NCBI GenBank assembly: GCA_907165135.1
Contig: OU015568.1
Location: 2,356,001-2,420,000 of the forward strand
Direction: 5' to 3'
Source of the DNA: Oikopleura dioica
Taxonomy: Eukaryota > Animalia > Chordata
DNA: 64,000 nt
Of this stretch, positions 14,424-57,700 are shown piece after piece (the stretch's first letter is position 1; each line of letters starts with the position of its first letter). The notes under the pieces are model-generated. The model did no database searches. It saw nothing but the letters and a program-made list of their open reading frames with translations, and was not told the DNA's origin. A program made the position numbers and the translations under genes.

Positions 14424-14544
14424 GAGGGAGGCGATTTTCTGGCAGTTAGATTTTCTGGCAGTTAGACTTTCTGGCAAAGGCGATTTTCTGGCAATGCCAG
14501 AAAATCTAATATGCCAGAAAGTCTAACTGCCAGAAAATCGCCTC
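14424..14544. repeat. Left terminal inverted repeat of the MULE, built of TTAGA(T/C)TTTCTGGCAG-type subrepeats and internally palindromic
   Basis: Direct reading of the sequence. Confidence 0.9.
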
Positions 14545-20823: not shown

Positions 20824-21387
20824 TTATTCAAGATTAATAGCTGTAGCAAACATAAATCAGCTTCTTCCGGGAATTTCTGTGTTAATCACCCGGTGTTTGC
20901 ATCTGATTTCGAGTACTTGGTCACAGTGAGCACCCACTGAGATAATGGCGCACGCAAATGCTTTTTGAAACTGAACTTGTTATAAAACTATCCTGAAAAT
21001 TCTTCCTCAGAAGGTGGTGGAATCGGTGTCAGTTTCAACATTTTTCTATCCGCATTCTCTTCATCATCCTCCATTTTCTCAGAAAAATCAAAATCTAACT
21101 TTTCAGCTGCCTGTTAACCCGTTTGTTACTCCGAAAATAGCAAGAACGAACTGTGGATGCTGCCCTCATTCTATTTTTAGCGCAGAAATTTCAATTCCAA
21201 ATTCGTCGTCTTTTTTAGCGCCCTGAATAGTCGGCTTTTAGATCAAACGCTCCCGTCGAAAGGTGCAAACTCCTGCTGAAACTGCTCCGGAATGAAATTT
21301 GTGTGATAATCACCAGTTTTTCGAATTTATAAATGATTTTATTAAAAAGAGTTTTTTGCAGAGTTTCAAATAATATGCATACTAAAA

Positions 21388-21539
21388 AGGCGATTTTCTG
21401 GCAGTTAGACTTTCTGGCAGTTAGATTTTCTGGCAAAGGCGATTTTCTGGAAGTTAGATTTTCTGGCAGTGCCAGAAAATCGCCTTTGCCAGAAAGTCTA
21501 ACTGCCAGAAAATCTAACTGCCAGAAAATCGCCTCTCTC
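21388..21539. repeat. Right terminal inverted repeat of the MULE (subrepeat-built, palindromic)
   Basis: Reverse complement of the left TIR, with one extra subrepeat module. Confidence 0.9.
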
Positions 21540-31200: not shown

Positions 31201-34200
31201 TGGGCAATTATTTAACAACCGCATATTTGATGGTTCTTATCTTGCAGTTTAAGTTGTGATACAACATTTTCGATTCGAAAGTGAGCCGTGCTTTCAGACC
31301 CGTGCGACAGTTGTAAGCCCCGATTTGCTTGCGAAGCAGTTGATGCCGGCTCTGCTAGCGCTGATTGCGCATGTAAGCCTGGCTGGACCGGTAATGGACA
31401 GCTCTGCTTGCCTCAGAAGAAAACCACGACGACGAGAGCTGCATTGAAGCCAACAACGCTTCCGCCATTTAATCGCTTTGCGGCGAAGATTCTTCCTCAG
31501 CCATCGAGAAATGGAGCTGATCCTGGAATGAAGAAAAGCGGCGCCATGGCTGATTTGACCAGGAGATTAGAAGGAAAGGGTTTCATAAGCGCAGATTGCA
31601 TTTCATAACGAAAATTTCTTTTTTGAAAAATTCTCTTTTTCGTTCAAGAATCAAAAATTTCTTGATAGCGGAACAATGAAGACCATAATTTATGATAATT
31701 TCCACCAGTTCTAACTTCCTTGAACATTTTTCGGAGTCCGAAGGAAATGACTTCGGAAGTACGATCCAGCTAATCGCTTATTTTAAAGGACAAAAAATCT
31801 CGTGTCTAAAAAATGAAGCTTATGAGAATCTTCTTTAAAAGCATTAAAACAGGAGCAACTAGCGGTAAAATTCGGCCCTGCTCCTCAAAAGACCGCTGCG
31901 ACGACCGCTGCGCCAAGTACAGTTCGTCAGACCAATGCGTTCAAAAACCACGCCCTCCACAACAAAATACAAGCCAAAGTGTTCAGAGAAATCTCTTTCC
32001 AAGACTCCTTTTCTTCTTTTATTTTCATAAATAATTTTTTCTGAACATGAAAAAAGCCAAAGCCACAGCAACACCAAGTTACGTGCCAAGCTACCCGGAA
32101 ATTGACGCGACACCAAAACAGGCGCAAATTGACCTTGATGGGTTAAAACGTGAGATTGCCGAATTTGCGAAACTCGCGGCCGAGCAATCCGCCTCACAGG
32201 TCGAGACCAAGGTCAAATTTTCGCAAGACGAGATGAAGGAAGAAGTCGATCGAGTGGTTGAACTTGTTCGAGGTAAGAAAAATCAACGATTCTAGCCTTT
32301 ATTCGAAACGAGCGTCTGATTCGCCCAGCTCCCTTTTTTCGAAAAGCCGTAAAGAGGCACTTTGAATAATTTCTTCCGCCGTCCCCAGAACATAAACATT
32401 TGATGGAACCAGGGTCTCGAAAAAAACGTTGCCCGCCCGTGGTATTAGCGCCACCGCTCACTTTCGTCCACCGCGCTTTTGTTTTTCGCGCTAAAATACC
32501 ACCGCGGGCCCGTAGTAGCGCCACCCACGGACACACGTAGAATTCCACGCGAGCGGGTGGAAATAAAGTGCCCAGACTGGGCAGCCCAGTTTTAATTTTC
32601 GGCGCTCGCGGATAGGTCTCACCCTCGGCGAGCGCAGCTTACTTGAAGATTTAAATGTTTGATAATTAAATGAAAAACAATAACCTTTATAACATGGGCG
32701 ACCCTTTGTTACTCGATAAAACGCTGGCACTTTTGAGTTAGTTACTCAATAAAACGATGGCGCAGCAAAAAAAAATTTAATCGGTAAAACGATGGCACCC
32801 TTGTTAATCGAGGCGCGGCGCTCTCTTGCATGACGTCATCGAGAGGTCAAAAATGTAACAATATAGCCTTGTTAATGTGGGACTTTATTGATACGGCCTG
32901 GCTTAGTGGAGAACGCATCCGCTCAGTGATCGCTGGGCGCGAGTTCGATCCCACCCCGCTCTTTTTTTTCCCCTTGCGTGCGGTCCCCATGGTAGTTTTT
33001 ATTGTAAAAATTGCTACGTAATTCCACCACCAAATGTTCAAAACACCACCAAAATTATTTTTATTAAGTTCCGCCATCGCATTGGTCAGAAGAGATCTCC
33101 AGCAAGAGAGTCCTCGGATGACGTCATTCCAGAGAGCCCCGCGCCTCGATTAACAAGGGTGCCATCGTTTTATCGAGTAAATTTTTTTTCGCCGCGCCAT
33201 CGTTTTACGGATTAACAGAGGGCCGCCCGCCACAGTTTTATTGAGTAACTAGTTAAAAAGCGCCAGCGTTTTATCGAGTAACAAAGGGTCGCCCATGTTA
33301 CTTATAACACTGGGTAATATGAAAAAAAGGTCCCGGAAGTGGTAAGCTACCCGTTTGCTAAATATAAGCCGACTCACAGTCGAGGATTACTTTCAAAAAG
33401 AACCAAATACTAGGACTAACCGTCAAGCGACCTTATCAGTTAGTATTCATAATGTGTTAGTTTCATAATGATTGAGTGCACTTTGTTTTCCGATAGAAAC
33501 CCTATATTATATTAAGGCTATATATATTTCCATTTTATATAAAATACATAACTTTACTAATCCGTCTAATATCTGAACTCGACTAGTAGAGATATTCTTT
33601 TCTCGATTCATTAAATAGTGGCTTCTTAGTTCCCCACATTGGATCGGCAATCGGAACGAATTGTGTAGTGGTTCGTATCGCGCTCTGCGGGTCGCCGCTT
33701 GGCCTAACTCCCCTCTGGCGCAGGCCTTATTTAGCAAACCGAGCCACCGTTGTTTTTGAAAGTGTACCACGGGCGGGCCGTGGAACGGCGAAAGTGGGGG
33801 CGCTAATACCACGCGCGTACCACGCTTTTTTCGAACCCCTGGATGGAACTAAAAGTGTAATCTCCTTCGCTCTAAGAAAGCCGCTGCAAATCCAAAATCG
33901 CAAGGTTTTGCATTTTTGTTTCTTGCATCGTGGTTATTAGGTAAATTTTCGAGCAAATATTTTGTGAATACTTTCTGCCAAATTAACGGGTTCGAGTGGT
34001 GTATTTTTGTAGTGGAATGCGTCTCGGAGGAAAAATGCTAGGGTCATTACAATCATTAAATAAATGACACCCTTCTTCTATCAAGCCGAAACATAACTTC
34101 ATGTTGATGAGAAAACTAAGGCTGTTTGTCCTTATTCCTTATTGGAAATCCATCCTGAAATTTTTCCTAGTTTTTATCAGTCAATCTGAGGCTGAACGCG

Positions 34201-52200: not shown

Positions 52201-54706
52201 AGTTATAAATGGCTTTTTGAGAGGATTCCAAAATAATTTTCAGAGGAAAATGAACAAAATAATTGCAAGGGTCCTTCATCATAAGATTTACGGTATCAAC
52301 TTATTTGAAAAATATTCAGATTATTTTTTATTTAATTCTCTTTCAATTACCTTTACTGAAGTTTTCTGATGATCTCTTTTAGTATTTTTTGACGTGTTTT
52401 TGATAAATCTCTCTTTGAAACTAATTCGTGTTCTATAAAAAATAAATCCCGTTAGAACAATATTTCAGGTCGTTGCCGCTATCCGTATGTTTAGCGCAGC
52501 GCATAAGCGGGATGGCGCGGCGGTGGCGCATCCGCGCGGCGCACTCACGCGCCATCCACTCCTCCGATTTTCCGCCGCAGCTGGAAGCGAAACTGATCTC
52601 GGTTAGAATCAGTGTTCTTGGGCAATATGGCAGATAATTTGTACATTTCCGGCGACAGAGGGGGACCTTTTAACCGACGGGACTTATCCGTTGCAAATTG
52701 GCAATGAAAGGGGGAAAGTTAACGGCAAAGTTAAGGGGAATGTCACCGGAAGTCGATAAAAAGACCATATGAATCTAAAGGGGTTAACTTCAATTCAAGG
52801 GAGTTAAGATCTTTTACTTCGATCTCCAACAAACATTTTCATGGAAGATATTCCGGGCGAAGGTTAATGTAGTGTAAACAGTACAGAAGCCCCTTATTAA
52901 CCCATATTAATCTCCGCTTAATTCCCTTAAAAACACGCTCTTGGTGCTCGTGCTCTTGAGAACCAGTTTGCCCAGCGGATCAATTAGCATTTTCGCGCTC
53001 AGGGGCGATATAAAGGTTTATAATTCGTGCATATAGACTCTATTTCCTTCATTTACCTCTTTTCTGTATTTTCTCTTTTCTTTGCCTCCAATTTTCGGTA
53101 TTTTTGACGAGTGTGAGTCTTTTAGCCCATTCATGCAGAAAATAATTGCAACAAGTTACGATCGCGGGGAGTAATTACCATCTACGCGCGGCGGAAACTT
53201 GGATACTGCCAAGTTAAAGTTAAGACAAGCCGGCTCAAAGGTTAAGGGTCTATCGCTGGAGAGTTTGATTTATTATCGAAAATGACTTTAGCTTTTTTAA
53301 GCGAATTTTCTATTGAAATTCTTGGTTTAAAAATAAGGGGGTCACAAAGATAACTCTAACACTAGAGCGGCTCAAAATTAAACAATCCATATTTTAATTG
53401 ATGATAATAAAACCACTTGAGAATTACAATTTTAAAGCCACCCAAGTAGGAGAAGCAAATATGCGCAAAACAGGGCGGCTCCTCTTGGAGTCTCGATTAT
53501 AAATCAATTTCAAAATCGCGACTTCGCAACTTCCAAAACTGGAGCGCTCAAACATTTCCTGCAGCGCGAGGTGTTATCTTTTATTAACGACCTGAATTTG
53601 AAGAAGCGTTTTCTTGATGGATGGTATTTTGTTGAATAGGAAAAAAATGCAGGCACGGTACTTGAAATTCGTGTTGAGGGATGAATGAGCAACTAAGAGC
53701 ACGTGAGCATTGTCCAGCGTTTTTCTTGTTTTCAGTTCGACCGACGTGGCCAACTAGCAAACAAGTTTTATAAACAAGCCTTACAAAGCTCTTTTAATTT
53801 CAAAAAATAGTACCAGCGAATAAATACCAGCATCAAGGGCCTTGATTCAAGGCTTGAAGAGGTTAGCTGATATTGAAGATAGCAAATTTTATTGAAGAAA
53901 AATGAGCATTGAAGGGCTTTTTTTTATCAGAAAATCACATTTTCAATTAAAAAAAGAAAAAGATGGATTAAAATAATTAAAATTTTCAAAAACCATTTTT
54001 TCTCCAAATTGATTTTCCAAGGAGTAATTTTCGGCTCTCTTTGTTTCCGCCGGGTCGGGTAATTAGGTTCCTTTCGGCTGTGTAAATGTGACGCGTTGAG
54101 TGGTGTAATTTGGCGCGATTTTGGTGCGCCAAACAAGCTTCGCAGAAGTACTCAAAATTCCAAACTTATCGACTTTGAAGAAAAAATCGACTGCCGACTT
54201 AGATAAGCTCTAGAATTGCTTGAGAACGAAGCACTGCTTTCGCTTCTGAGTAGTATTTTTCGCCACGCTTTTTGATTTCTTGACCCTCTTGCGTCCAAAA
54301 ATCCCGGATTATCCGACCACACGGAATCATGTATGAGCGCAGCTGAGGTAGGCTTAAACGCGTCTGAAGAACGCGGCCGTCTGTATGACCTGAATACAGC
54401 TAGAAATATTTTTCCAATTGATTTGAGGAAATTGATCAATTGGATAATGCCAAATCCCCGACGCTTCTGTCCAAACACAAGTTCCACTTGAGCTCTTCTA
54501 TTCAAGAAGGCATGCGCGAGCCAGCTGCGGCCTGGCTTCGATTAGCAACTATTCCAATCCTCTTCTACTTTACCCGCCCTTGAGTAACAATGACTGACCT
54601 GCCACACCGGTATTTATCTGAGCTGCAACAAATTCAATTGTCGAAAAACTTATTCTCAAGCCTTTTTGCGTAGAAAAGCAGCATTAATCCAGAGAGCTCA
54701 GAAATT

Positions 54707-57700
54707 TTATTTCGTAAGAATTATGGAATAAGCTTGAGGAAGTAGGTACCACTGGTCATAGTCCATATTTCCACATTCTTCATTGGCAAGATGAAGAAAT
54801 TCTCCATTGGGTCCGTGGTAATCATAACCTGGGGTCGGCAACTCGACAACTCAAAAACTCGACAGTCGAGTTGTCGAGTCGAGTCGAGTTGAGTTTTTTA
54901 TAACTCGACTCGACTCGACAGTCAATTTTAGTGTCGAGTTGCCGACCCCAGATCATAACGACCATAGGCTTGCAAGCAATCGTCCATCAGATTTTTATCC
55001 GCGTAGTAGCGATTCTGAACGAAGATCCGAAGTTGAGAATCTTCTTTCTTTGAAGAATGGTAGTGGAGAGTATTTTGAAGAATGTATTCGTCCCCTTCAA
55101 CACGGTCGAGAATCATTTGGTGAAAGAAGACGTCTTCGTCTTTCTTCCAATATGCACCGGTTACTGTAAGAGGTCTGGTGAATTTGAAGTTATTGTGAAG
55201 AAGAACTAAAGCAAATATATGACGATTGTAGCTTGAAGTTAACTTACCTTGATGATAATCAAACTTCGCCTTTCCAAAGTAAAAACGTTTGATCGTTTCC
55301 CAGCCGCTTGGTTTCAAAAAGGTTTTGCATTTCATGCTTTTTAACAGCATTTCAATATCGTTTTCTTGAAATAATTTTTCCTTGTTGTTGGGATTGAGAT
55401 TGAGCCCAGCCAAACTTCGAGGATAAATGATCATAATGATTGGAATAAAGATATTCTCAAAGATGAACATTGTATCATACAGCTCAGCTTCAACCTTCAG
55501 GTCATTCTTCAACGCCCATCTAAGAAGAACACTGACAGAAATCGGTACACAAAGATTGGTGTCTTTCTGGTTAGGCACATTCGTTGTGAGATTCTGAAAA
55601 TTGATATTCATCTGTTTCGTCATTTTTTCTTTGATATAAGCGACAACCGAGGACTTCGTCAAATTTTCATCGTCGAGGCATAAATTTGGCGCTACGTTCT
55701 TCAAAGAGATGATTTTTGATAGTTTCTGTATTTGATCCATTTTCGGCTTATTATTCGAGAGCCACTCATCATTGGAAATCTTTGATTGAATATCAGTTAA
55801 ATTTGGAGCTTTATTTTGTTCGAATTACCTTCAGCTCATTTTTGATTTGCTCTCTTTCATTGTCATCTATCGGTTTGAAAAAAAGAGTCCATGCAGTCAC
55901 CCAATCGCACAAAATAAAGATGTAAATACTGCTGATGGCAACCACCATAGAATTAGCTCCTCCTCTGAGAAGCTGATCAACACCCGAAAAACCAGCAGAG
56001 CCAGCAACTTTAAATAAAATTGAATCTTCCTTAATGAGAAAAATTACAAAGAGATGTCGGGCTTCTGAATTTGCTTCCATGTCTTGCGTATCCCATCTTT
56101 CTGAAACTTTTCCTTTCAGTAAGCTGATAAGTGATGCCGAAGTCGATCCACTTGGCCTGTTCTTGATTGGCTTCTTTCTTCAACAGGATGTTGTCTGGTT
56201 TTGGGTCGTAGTGCGAAATTCCGATTCTGGACAAATATTCTTCTCCGTTTTTGACTCCCATCGCTATAGCCTTCCTTTCTCCTAAATCAAGATTCCCCTC
56301 TTTCAGCTTTTGCCTTAAGGATATAGCCTATGAAATTGAACTTTCATAGCGCCTAAATGCGACGTCGGATCATTTTATTTTGAAAACAATCCTATCTAAA
56401 AATGTATGCAGAACTCGATTCTGGTACTTGTTTAAAAATTTTCATTAAAATTTTTCTCTGTAGAGCGTTTTAAAATCTTACGATCGCGATTTCTCGAAAT
56501 ATTTACATTAAATCGGTCGAGTTTTTTTTGATAAAAAAGTAATCTAGACCCTTATCTACAAAATTATGGGTTCGGTTTTCTCTTACCCTGACAAAAACCG
56601 ATTTTAGAGCCATTTCCATGAGGCTTCCTCAGCGCATGAATAGTGTAAAAAGCGCTGCGCTGGGTGCTCAATCTCTCGACTCCTCTTTCCCGAGAGAGTC
56701 TTCGCGTTTAAAAGTGCGCTCTGATTGGCTAGACCGAAAAAAGCGCGCATGGAAGAAAAACAGGAGCAAGAAAGAGGAAAACACTAGAATGAAAATTTGG
56801 CCGAGTTCGAAAAATTTTCAGCCACAATATTTTAGTTAAGCATTTTGCTAATGCAGTCATTGGTTTAGTTTTAGCGATTTAATGTAAAAATTTCGAGAAA
56901 TCGCGATCGTAAGATTTCAAAACGCTATACAGAGAAAAATTCTGATGAAAATTTTTAAGAAAGTACCAGAATCGATTTCTGCATACATTTTTAGGTAGGA
57001 TTGTTTTTGAAATAAAATGATCCGACGTCGCATTTAGGCGCTATGAAAGTTCAATTTCATAGGCTATATGATATAGCCTATATCCTTAAACTAAATTCGC
57101 AGAATTCCATTATTGTGATCCACCCAAGACAGTCGTACTCTTCGTTGTTTTTATCAGAGAATAGCTCGACATTCGCAAAATTTTTAACGATATTATCATT
57201 GAAAGGTATTGTTTCGTTCTCATCGTCCCTGGATTCAGCGATATCGTAGTCTAAAATCTATCAATACTAGAAGATAAATACATGATTACCTTTCGATAAA
57301 TGAATTTTAAAGTCAAGCTCATTCTTATTTTGAGTAAAAATGGCTGAATCAAAAAGTTGAACGCGAACGGCCACTTCAAGGTCATCAAATTTTTCCTTCA
57401 AAACGATTGCTTCTCCTCCTGATGAAATCATGCACAGAGAAGAATCAAGGGACCATTGTCCATTTTCTTCTTTCAACTCGGATCGCTGTATTTTCTTGCC
57501 TTCAAAATCTATATTCGCGTCTAAAATTTTTCTCTGGAAAGGGCTGATTTTCCACGTTTTTGTTGCATTTTCGCCATATCTATCGTAGGTAATCTTTCCT
57601 TCTCCGTTTTCAAAAATGACCTCAGTCCATACAGCACAATTTTGATCCTCGAAATCCGTTCTCTCAACTGACAAAATTAATCTATCCAAATCGCCTCTAG

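What the first reader, a model, noticed from the sequence alone, without database searches (positions are those of the whole stretch)
54821..54959. hAT MITE that builds its own perfect GT-AG intron inside a coding exon (introner-like)
Seen: on the coding (minus) strand the first TSD copy begins with GT (GGT C|GTTATGAT) and the element ends CCCCAG|. Removing 54829-54959 (131 nt = 123-bp element + 8-bp TSD) restores GGT CGT TAT GAT TAC, giving ...GRYDYHGPNGEFLHL...LTK*. Unspliced, the frame stops at RYDLGSATRH*, losing the last ~38 aa. Established: introner elements create introns by using one splice site from the element and one from the TSD. Inference: this MITE family may be generating introns here.
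Basis: partly seen in the sequence, partly recalled or inferred. Interest (0 to 1): 0.85.

Follow-up and report, generated by a model that had tools for sequence, protein, structure and literature searches.

The report
Young transposon insertion in coding exon
A 123-base mobile element recently landed in the last coding exon of an Oikopleura gene and is absent from other animals' DNA; its ends could let it be spliced out exactly like an intron, but no RNA data could show that this happens.

Summary
A 123-bp MITE lies at 54829-54951. It has perfect 20-bp terminal inverted repeats and a perfect 8-bp target-site duplication (54821-28 and 54952-59). It interrupts the last coding exon of a minus-strand gene of an Oikopleura dioica-type genome, encoding a protein kinase plus a lineage-specific C-terminal domain. 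Removing 54829-54959 (131 nt, GT..AG on the sense strand) restores a reading frame that matches paralogs and an orthologous sequence.

New here: the empty site exists as DNA. Three environmental contigs, about 93% identical to the window, carry one copy of the 8-mer and an uninterrupted exon. Another sequenced sample of the same species label (X28) holds a contig with exactly that 131-nt skip. The insertion is therefore young and polymorphic. The gene has evolved under purifying selection (dN/dS about 0.2).

Splicing could not be tested: three RNA runs gave zero reads on the locus. Several points argue against efficient splicing:
- the donor is weak (3 of 9 matches to the consensus);
- both splice sites sit in a -97 kcal/mol hairpin;
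- a second MITE splits the kinase domain of the same gene.

The GT fits the known hAT target motif, so it is not evidence of selection. First readers noted at least 10 similar "MITE in an exon" cases elsewhere in this genome; none has been followed up.

The parts
54829..54951 (.). 123-bp MITE, too short to encode a transposase. It reads 5'-CTG...CAG-3' on both strands.
   Evidence: It is absent from the orthologous environmental contigs L001-L003 and from one contig of DNA run X28.
54829..54848 (+). Left terminal inverted repeat, 20 nt.
   Evidence: 0 mismatches, I1.
54932..54951 (-). Right terminal inverted repeat, 20 nt, perfect complement of the left one.
   Evidence: I1.
54821..54828 (.). 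Target-site duplication copy ATCATAAC (GTTATGAT on the sense strand). This is the downstream copy on the gene's strand and stays in the mRNA under the intron model.
   Evidence: D9. The empty sites carry a single copy.
54952..54959 (.). Target-site duplication copy, the upstream one on the gene's strand. Its first two sense-strand bases (54959, 54958) are the candidate GT donor.
   Evidence: D9.
54829..54959 (-). Candidate 131-nt GT..AG intron (one TSD copy plus the element). Its removal recreates the empty-site sequence exactly.
   Evidence: Sequence. It is identical to the skip 54820->54952 (cut +8) seen in X28 DNA and to the gap in alignment A2. Splicing itself is not shown.
54872..54920 (.). 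Inner perfect 19-nt inverted repeat (arms 54872-54890 and 54902-54920). Together with the TIRs it makes a hairpin.
   Evidence: I2. RNA fold -96.6 kcal/mol, z = -15.3.
54928..54930 (-). TAA stop inside the element. It ends the frame if the element stays in the mRNA.
   Evidence: ORF 54928-55740.
54707..54828 (-). Remainder of the last exon: 37 codons (YHGPNGEF...SIILTK) after the split codon, plus the stop at 54707-54709. AATAAA lies at 54706-54711.
   Evidence: Conserved in paralogs and in ortholog P0104. It corresponds to four confident beta-strands of the family model.
54960..55163 (-). Upstream part of the last coding exon.
   Evidence: tblastn of paralogs; alignment A2.
55164..55247 (-). 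Ordinary 84-nt in-frame intron of the same gene (GTAAGT...CAG). It is also present in the environmental ortholog.
   Evidence: Paralogs lack these 28 codons. Its divergence of 13/84 is similar to dS.
56314..57089 (.). Second, unrelated MITE (about 200-nt inverted arms, TTAA flanks). It splits the kinase domain of the same gene.
   Evidence: Sequence. Paralog P0058 residues 2-122 end at 57084 and residues 120-206 resume at 56321. Inverted arms.

Best explanation
SHOWN. A 123-bp non-autonomous DNA transposon inserted recently into the last coding exon of a minus-strand gene of an Oikopleura dioica-type genome. It looks hAT-like by its 8-bp duplication and target motif. The gene encodes a protein kinase followed by a lineage-specific C-terminal domain. 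The insertion duplicated the 8-mer GTTATGAT. It is a presence/absence variant: other DNA of the same and of a closely related population has the intact exon. The gene has been under purifying selection.

SHOWN BY SEQUENCE. The element reads CTG...CAG on both strands, so it brings an AG in either orientation. The duplicated target starts with GT on the sense strand. Exact removal of 131 nt as a GT-AG intron is therefore possible on paper.

INFERRED. hAT-type target choice (nTnnnnAn; GT....AC in hobo) makes GT-starting duplications common. The GT is then a by-product of the transposase, not a sign of selection for splicing.

INFERRED, and my commitment. This copy is most likely a young segregating insertion allele that is spliced poorly or not at all at those sites. 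Its mRNA would stop at the TAA inside the element. The protein would lose 37 conserved residues, corresponding to four predicted beta-strands. I think the allele is tolerated because the gene is one dispensable member of a family of about 100 homologs found here, and this haplotype already carries a second MITE in the kinase domain.
For: Insertion and duplication.

Empty site in DNA:
- X28 has a contig with the joint 54820->54952, skipping 131 nt, with 8 letters fitting either side, at depth 56. Another contig ends exactly at 54828.
- Environmental contigs L001-L003 are 92.5-93.8% identical on both sides. Their two alignments overlap by exactly the 8-mer.

Coding status: paralogs are colinear across the site. 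Ortholog P0104 reads ...AYGRYDYHGPNGEF...LTK. dN/dS is 0.17-0.21 with dS about 0.15 over 184 codons.

Weak splice signals: the donor matches CAGGTAAGT at 3 of 9 positions, against 8/9 and 5/9 for two of the gene's own introns. The hairpin of -96.6 kcal/mol, z = -15, pairs both sites.

Second MITE in the kinase domain.

Large family: 102 and 110 homologs.

No transcripts: 0 reads in three RNA runs, and no Logan RNA run holds the stretch.

Target motif: hobo NTNNNNAN / GTNCGNAC (PMC3276498).

Lost tail is structured: pLDDT 81-96 in the model of family member P0021.
Against: The zero RNA reads are no test. The runs may come from another cryptic lineage, or the gene may be silent in those samples.

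Larvacean spliceosomes are permissive. About 11-12% of O. dioica introns are non-canonical (PMC8008620; PMC7072748). Fritillaria borealis splices MITE-derived introns that have TIRs and TSDs (PMC11282704), so a hairpin and a weak donor need not block removal.

The gene shows purifying selection, which sits uneasily with a null allele in the reference haplotype.

Both MITEs in this gene have G*..AG boundaries. First readers report many exonic MITEs in conserved genes of this genome (unchecked).
Confidence: 0.52

Rival explanations
1. Introner-like intron birth. The filled allele is transcribed and the spliceosome removes 54959-54829 precisely, with GT from the duplication and AG from the element. 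The protein is then unchanged and the insertion is neutral from the moment it lands.
For: Exact GT..AG boundaries and exact restoration of a conserved frame.

The same architecture (element carries the 3' site, the 5' site is co-opted from the TSD) is documented for introners (PMC9860276).

MITE-born introns exist in the larvacean F. borealis. Oikopleura is listed among species with transposon-insertion introns (PMC3443670).

The gene is under purifying selection, yet the reference haplotype carries two exonic MITEs, both with G*..AG ends.

Recurrent first-reader notes of exonic MITEs in this genome; these are leads only.
Against: No RNA evidence at all.

The donor context GTC|GTTATG matches the consensus at 3 of 9 positions, with a pyrimidine at +3.

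The length of 131 nt compares with a median of 49 nt for the species (PMC8008620).

Both sites are paired in a 28-bp-plus stem.

The GT is expected from hAT target choice and in 4-12% of random exonic hits.

The empty allele exists as DNA, so a MITE-less read alone would not prove splicing.
Confidence: 0.35
2. The element is removed imprecisely or partially, through other nearby sites. One example is the GT one codon upstream at 54962 with the same AG (134 nt, a one-codon deletion). Others are sites inside the element. The result would be a mix of isoforms.
For: One search lists frame-preserving donor/acceptor pairs. The donor at 54962 scores 4/9, slightly better than the donor at 54959.
Against: All candidates are weak (5/9 or less), and there is no RNA evidence.
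Confidence: 0.08
3. The repeat structure is chance or an assembly artefact, not a transposon insertion.
For: None found.
Against: A perfect 20-nt TIR against 0.01 expected and a perfect 8-nt TSD.

A clean empty site in environmental contigs (reported under three assembly accessions, 99.9-100% identical to one another) and in another sample's contigs.

Raised contig depth and internal length variants over the element in X28 indicate other copies.
Confidence: 0.01

Closest known systems
[quoted passage not shown] 2022, PMC9860276; mechanism of Huff et al. 2016)
   Same: A short TIR/TSD DNA transposon in a coding exon. The AG comes from the element's end and the GT from the duplicated target. Removal restores the mRNA without any change in length.
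   Different: Those families are defined by many copies that are annotated, spliced introns. Here one copy is seen and no splicing is shown. The TSD is 8 bp rather than 3-4 bp, and the host is a chordate.
MITE-derived non-canonical introns of the larvacean Fritillaria borealis (Henriet et al. 2019, as summarised in PMC11282704 and PMC13326754)
   Same: Same animal class. The introns have TIRs and TSDs at species-specific positions. The spliceosome is permissive and there is no U12 system.
   Different: The F. borealis introns are mostly AG-AC or AG-AT and are fixed and shown to be spliced. This one is GT-AG, polymorphic and unverified. It lies in Oikopleura, where most introns are canonical.
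hAT-superfamily MITEs (hobo/Hermes/Ac type)
   Same: An 8-bp TSD that fits nTnnnnAn on both strands. Short TIRs. A small non-coding body.
   Different: The TIR begins CTGGG, not the usual YARNG (CAG/TAG). No autonomous partner or hAT transposase was linked. P elements also make 8-bp duplications with a GT....AC motif.
Transposon-insertion introns reported for O. dioica (Denoeud et al. 2010, as tabulated in PMC3443670)
   Same: Same species complex and the same proposed mechanism.
   Different: I could not read the primary paper. Whether those cases involve this family, 8-bp TSDs or polymorphic sites is unknown to me.

Membership tests
MITE (non-autonomous class II transposon) | Terminal inverted repeats | tested here: met
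   20/20 nt perfect.
MITE (non-autonomous class II transposon) | Target-site duplication and a matching empty site | tested here: met
   8/8 nt TSD. There is a single copy of the 8-mer in L001-L003 and in an X28 contig.
MITE (non-autonomous class II transposon) | Small, with no transposase gene | tested here: met
   123 bp, made of nested GTCGAG-type palindromes.
MITE (non-autonomous class II transposon) | Multi-copy family | tested here: inconclusive
   Only one copy in the window. In X28 the summed contig depth over the element is about 1200 against about 75 in the flanks, and length variants are present. The tool warns that this depth is not a copy number.
hAT superfamily | 8-bp TSD | tested here: met
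   D9.
hAT superfamily | Target motif nTnnnnAn | tested here: met
   ATCATAAC and GTTATGAT both have T at position 2 and A at position 7. Motif from PMC3276498. 11% of octamers in this CDS fit by chance.
hAT superfamily | TIR starting YARNG (CAG/TAG...) | tested here: not met
   The TIR starts CTGGG. The consensus is from my own knowledge of Ac, hobo and Hermes.
hAT superfamily | Autonomous partner with a hAT transposase and the same TIRs | not testable with these tools
   Only 64 kb of the genome was readable. The TIR scan of metagenome contigs found nothing.
Introner / introner-like element | The copy lies in a transcribed coding exon, bounded by splice dinucleotides, one from the element and one from the TSD | tested here: met
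   GT at 54959-58 (TSD) and AG at 54830-29 (element end) on the sense strand. Exon status.
Introner / introner-like element | Removed from mRNA by the spliceosome | tested here: inconclusive
   0 reads in RNA runs X4-X6, rated 'no test' by the tool. No RNA run holds the stretch.
Introner / introner-like element | Many near-identical copies acting as introns in unrelated genes | not testable with these tools
The search with the element's own translation found no candidate. First-reader notes of other exonic MITEs are unchecked.
Ordinary O. dioica spliceosomal intron | Donor close to the consensus; short (median 49 nt) and AT-rich | tested here: not met
   3 of 9 matches to CAGGTAAGT. 131 nt with a GC-rich stem. 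Median intron length from PMC8008620.

The most novel reading that the evidence does not exclude
This is an intron being born in a chordate, caught while filled and empty alleles still segregate. In this reading, a hAT-like MITE whose ends read CTG...CAG supplies an AG in either orientation. The transposase's own target preference supplies the GT. A fixed share of exonic insertions would then be splice-ready at once and neutral. If general, such elements could underlie the extreme intron turnover of Oikopleura, and perhaps its many G*-AG introns.
Probability: 0.3. Interest if true: 0.7.

Novelty: new member of a known kind. Interest (0 to 1): 0.48.

Why it matters
How new introns arise in animals is still argued mostly from old, eroded examples. 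Introners have been found in only two animal groups among 3,325 eukaryotic genomes surveyed (PMC9860276).

This site offers a clean natural experiment in a culturable chordate. The same exon exists with and without a splice-ready transposon. One RT-PCR on genotyped animals would say whether a fresh insertion is spliced out immediately.

If it is not spliced, the site is simply a young loss-of-function insertion allele in a fast-expanding gene family, which is ordinary.

The point that hAT-type target choice itself favours GT-starting duplications is useful for judging the other candidates of this kind flagged in this genome. Frame restoration is automatic and a GT start is partly expected, so neither counts as evidence of splicing.

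Tried and rejected
The older RNA runs listed hold none of the sampled words.

2. Other copies of the family.
- An exact 20-mer TIR scan of metagenome contigs gave 0 hits.
- A protein search with the element's open frame found no candidate.
- The search of earlier findings by sequence was blank.

3. Empty-site 22-mer in metagenome contigs: 0 hits. The empty site was found instead through protein P0104.

4. Annotated or transcript-derived protein of this locus: none in the three protein searches.

5. A de novo intron set from the window, meant to build a splice-site matrix, was too noisy and was dropped. I compared with the gene's own homology-supported introns instead.

6. The bacterial promoter/terminator scan is irrelevant for a eukaryote and was ignored.

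7. Fold of the C-terminal domain: there was no significant structural match, so no family name is given.

8. I could not open Denoeud et al. 2010. I did not try to open Henriet et al. 2019 and know it only through PMC11282704 and PMC13326754.

Rejected: chance or artefact. Also rejected: treating 'in-frame removal' as evidence, since it is automatic for an element plus one TSD.

Full report
WHAT IS THERE. On the minus strand the region reads ...GCCTATGGTC|GTTATGAT|CTGGGGTCGG...CCGACCCCAG|GTTATGAT|TACCACGG....

- The 8-mer ATCATAAC (plus strand) occurs at 54821-54828 and 54952-54959 (D9).
- Between the two copies lies a 123-bp element at 54829-54951.
- Its outer 20 nt are perfect inverted repeats: 2 matches in the window against 0.01 expected in shuffles (I1).
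- An inner perfect 19-nt inverted repeat lies at 54872-54890 and 54902-54920 (I2).
- A scan of the whole window for TIRs of at least 11 nt flanked by 8-nt direct repeats returns only this element.

THE HOST GENE AND ORGANISM. All named homologs of the interrupted ORF are 'unnamed protein product [Oikopleura dioica]'. The rest come from marine metagenomes. The window therefore comes from O. dioica or one of its cryptic lineages.

The gene runs on the minus strand. Paralogs align as follows:
- to kinase exons at 57470-57084, 56321-56049 and 56032-55844;
- to a C-terminal domain at 55731-54960;
- and again at 54832-54710.

One kinase piece hits Pfam Pkinase just below its gathering cut-off (30.1 against 31.7 bits). 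The stop at 54707-54709 overlaps an AATAAA.

Read straight through, the ORF 54928-55740 ends ...AYGRYDLGSATRH* at a TAA inside the element. With 54959-54829 removed it continues ...AYGRYDYHGPNGEF...WYLLPQAYSIILTK*. This is colinear with the C-termini of paralogs, for example P0027 (alignment A1).

In an AlphaFold model of a family member (P0021; mean pLDDT 71, pTM 0.67), the residues that correspond to the lost tail form four beta-strands, with block pLDDT of 81-96 over the last 30 residues. A truncated protein would probably not fold.

THE EMPTY SITE EXISTS AS DNA. An exhaustive profile-free protein search found P0104 (147 aa, 85% identical). It extends 38 residues past the end of the query and reads ...AYGRYDYHGPNGEF...LTK.

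P0104 is encoded on a 1,450-bp scaffold whose record name (TARA...METAG) marks it as a Tara Oceans DNA metagenome (L001).
- L001 positions 1-527 match window 55477-54952 at 93.2%.
- L001 positions 520-1450 match window 54828-53910 at 92.5%.
- The two alignments overlap by exactly the 8-mer.
- The 84-nt intron and the 3' flank are present too, so this is genomic DNA of the orthologous locus.

Two further environmental contigs (L002, L003) are 99.9-100% identical to L001 and show the same junction. They may be re-assemblies of related samples, so I count them as one independent witness.

Independently, contigs of DNA run X28 were laid on the region. X28 is another sample with the same species label, from another study.
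- One contig gives a joint 54820->54952 that skips 131 nt, with 8 letters fitting either side, at depth 56.
- Another contig stops exactly at 54828, as expected at a branch of the assembly graph.

The empty allele in X28 is shown directly. That X28 also holds the filled allele is inferred from that break.

Taken together, the insertion is real, young (perfect TIRs and TSD) and polymorphic.

THE GENE WAS UNDER CONSTRAINT. Between the window and L001, over 184 codons, dN/dS is 0.17-0.21 with dS of 0.13-0.17. Differences by codon position are 7, 3 and 19. The intron differs at 13 of 84 sites, close to dS. The insertion is much younger than this divergence.

IS IT SPLICED? This could not be tested.
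- No indexed RNA run holds the stretch.
- The three raw-read oligo-dT runs laid on 54300-56330 gave zero reads at 90% likeness or more. The tool itself calls this no test. O. dioica consists of deeply diverged cryptic species (PMC11067885), so these runs may simply be another lineage.
- No protein from a transcript of this locus is in the collections.

Sequence arguments against efficient splicing:
- The donor context GTC|GTTATG matches CAGGTAAGT at 3 of 9 positions, with T at +3. Two of the gene's own introns match at 8/9 and 5/9.
- The candidate intron is 131 nt, against a species median of 49 nt (PMC8008620).
- The RNA folds into a hairpin of -96.6 kcal/mol (z = -15.3) that pairs both splice sites. 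The two TSD copies themselves pair through G-U wobbles.
- A second, unrelated MITE at 56314-57089, with about 200-nt inverted arms and TTAA flanks, splits the kinase domain of the same gene. Two exonic insertions in one member of a family of about 100 homologs found here fit a dispensable gene.

Sequence and background arguments for splicing:
- The boundaries are exactly GT..AG.
- Larvacean spliceosomes are permissive. About 11-12% of O. dioica introns are non-canonical, with GA-AG unusually common. F. borealis removes MITE-derived introns with TIRs and TSDs.
- Oikopleura is listed among species with transposon-insertion introns.
- The second MITE can also be cut out at G*..AG boundaries.
- The gene is constrained.

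WHY THE GT IS NOT STRONG EVIDENCE. Excising an element plus one TSD restores the frame for any transposon. The element reads CTG...CAG on both strands, so an AG at its 3' end is guaranteed in either orientation.

The TSD fits the hAT target motif nTnnnnAn on both strands. Natural hobo insertions prefer GTNCGNAC and P elements prefer GTCCGGAC (PMC3276498). A GT-starting duplication is therefore what such transposases tend to make.

In this CDS, GT is 3.6% of dinucleotides. G starts 12.5% of motif-fitting octamers and 19% of all positions. A single GT-AG case has a chance probability of roughly 0.04-0.2.

The same reasoning gives a real mechanistic point. A hAT-like MITE ending in CAG is pre-adapted to make splice-ready insertions. 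This is the architecture described for introners that carry the 3' site and take the 5' site from the TSD (PMC9860276).

MEMBERSHIP.
- MITE: met on TIR, TSD, size and empty site. Copy number is only indicated by raised depth and length variants in X28.
- hAT: TSD length and target motif are met. The TIR start (CTGGG rather than YARNG) is not met. An autonomous partner could not be tested.
- Introner: the architecture is met. Splicing and family-wide intron copies are untested.

VERDICT. The introner reading is possible but unproven.

I put about 0.35 on precise splicing and about 0.5 on an unspliced or poorly spliced insertion allele. The rest goes to imprecise splicing, for example from the GT at 54962, which gives an in-frame 134-nt removal.

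Other first-reader notes in this genome list at least ten similar exonic MITEs, including some in conserved genes. None has been followed up. They are leads, not support.

Noticed in passing
window 56314-57089: A second MITE of about 775 bp, with inverted arms of about 200 nt and TTAA on both flanks. It splits the kinase domain of the same gene. Paralog P0058 aligns up to 57084 and resumes at 56321 in the same frame. On the sense strand it can be cut out as AG|GA...AG. The upstream AG fits the context reported for O. dioica GA-AG introns, but the base after the GA (T, not A) does not (PMC7072748).
   Followed up: partly
window 54710-55740 (minus) and proteins P0001-P0216: The C-terminal domain belongs to a large family seen only in O. 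dioica and marine metagenomes (about 100 homologs). It is often fused to a protein kinase. It has near-invariant N-L-C-V-x-x-S and F-H-Q-M-x-x-D motifs and no Pfam match. The AlphaFold model has a helix starting at the Cys and a C-terminal beta-sheet. Foldseek finds nothing significant, but the weak top hits are mostly papain-like cysteine peptidases (C39 PCAT1/ComA, AvrPphB, staphopain, MCF).
   Followed up: partly
window 55164-55247 (minus): An 84-nt in-frame intron without a stop codon. ORF callers read straight through it: the N-terminus of P0104 is intron read-through.
   Followed up: yes
window 54815-54970 (minus): The two TSD copies (GUUAUGAU) can pair with each other through G-U wobbles. 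This extends the TIR stem to 28 bp or more. Such a long perfect dsRNA in a transcript could also attract ADAR or Dicer-type processing.
   Followed up: no
window 14428-14544 and 21386-21534: Two clusters of nested inverted repeats share the unit GGCGATTTTCTGGCAGTTAGATTTTCTGG. These look like palindromic short-repeat arrays of another element family.
   Followed up: no
window 32690-33300: A block of long imperfect inverted repeats (arms up to about 90 nt) around TAAAACGATGGCGCA-type units. It may be another MITE or a foldback element.
   Followed up: no
literature (PMC7072748, PMC9860276): The two animals singled out for unusually many GA-AG introns are O. dioica and the copepod Eurytemora affinis. 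Copepods are also named among introner hosts. Whether GA-AG introns in both are transposon-born would be worth testing.
   Followed up: no
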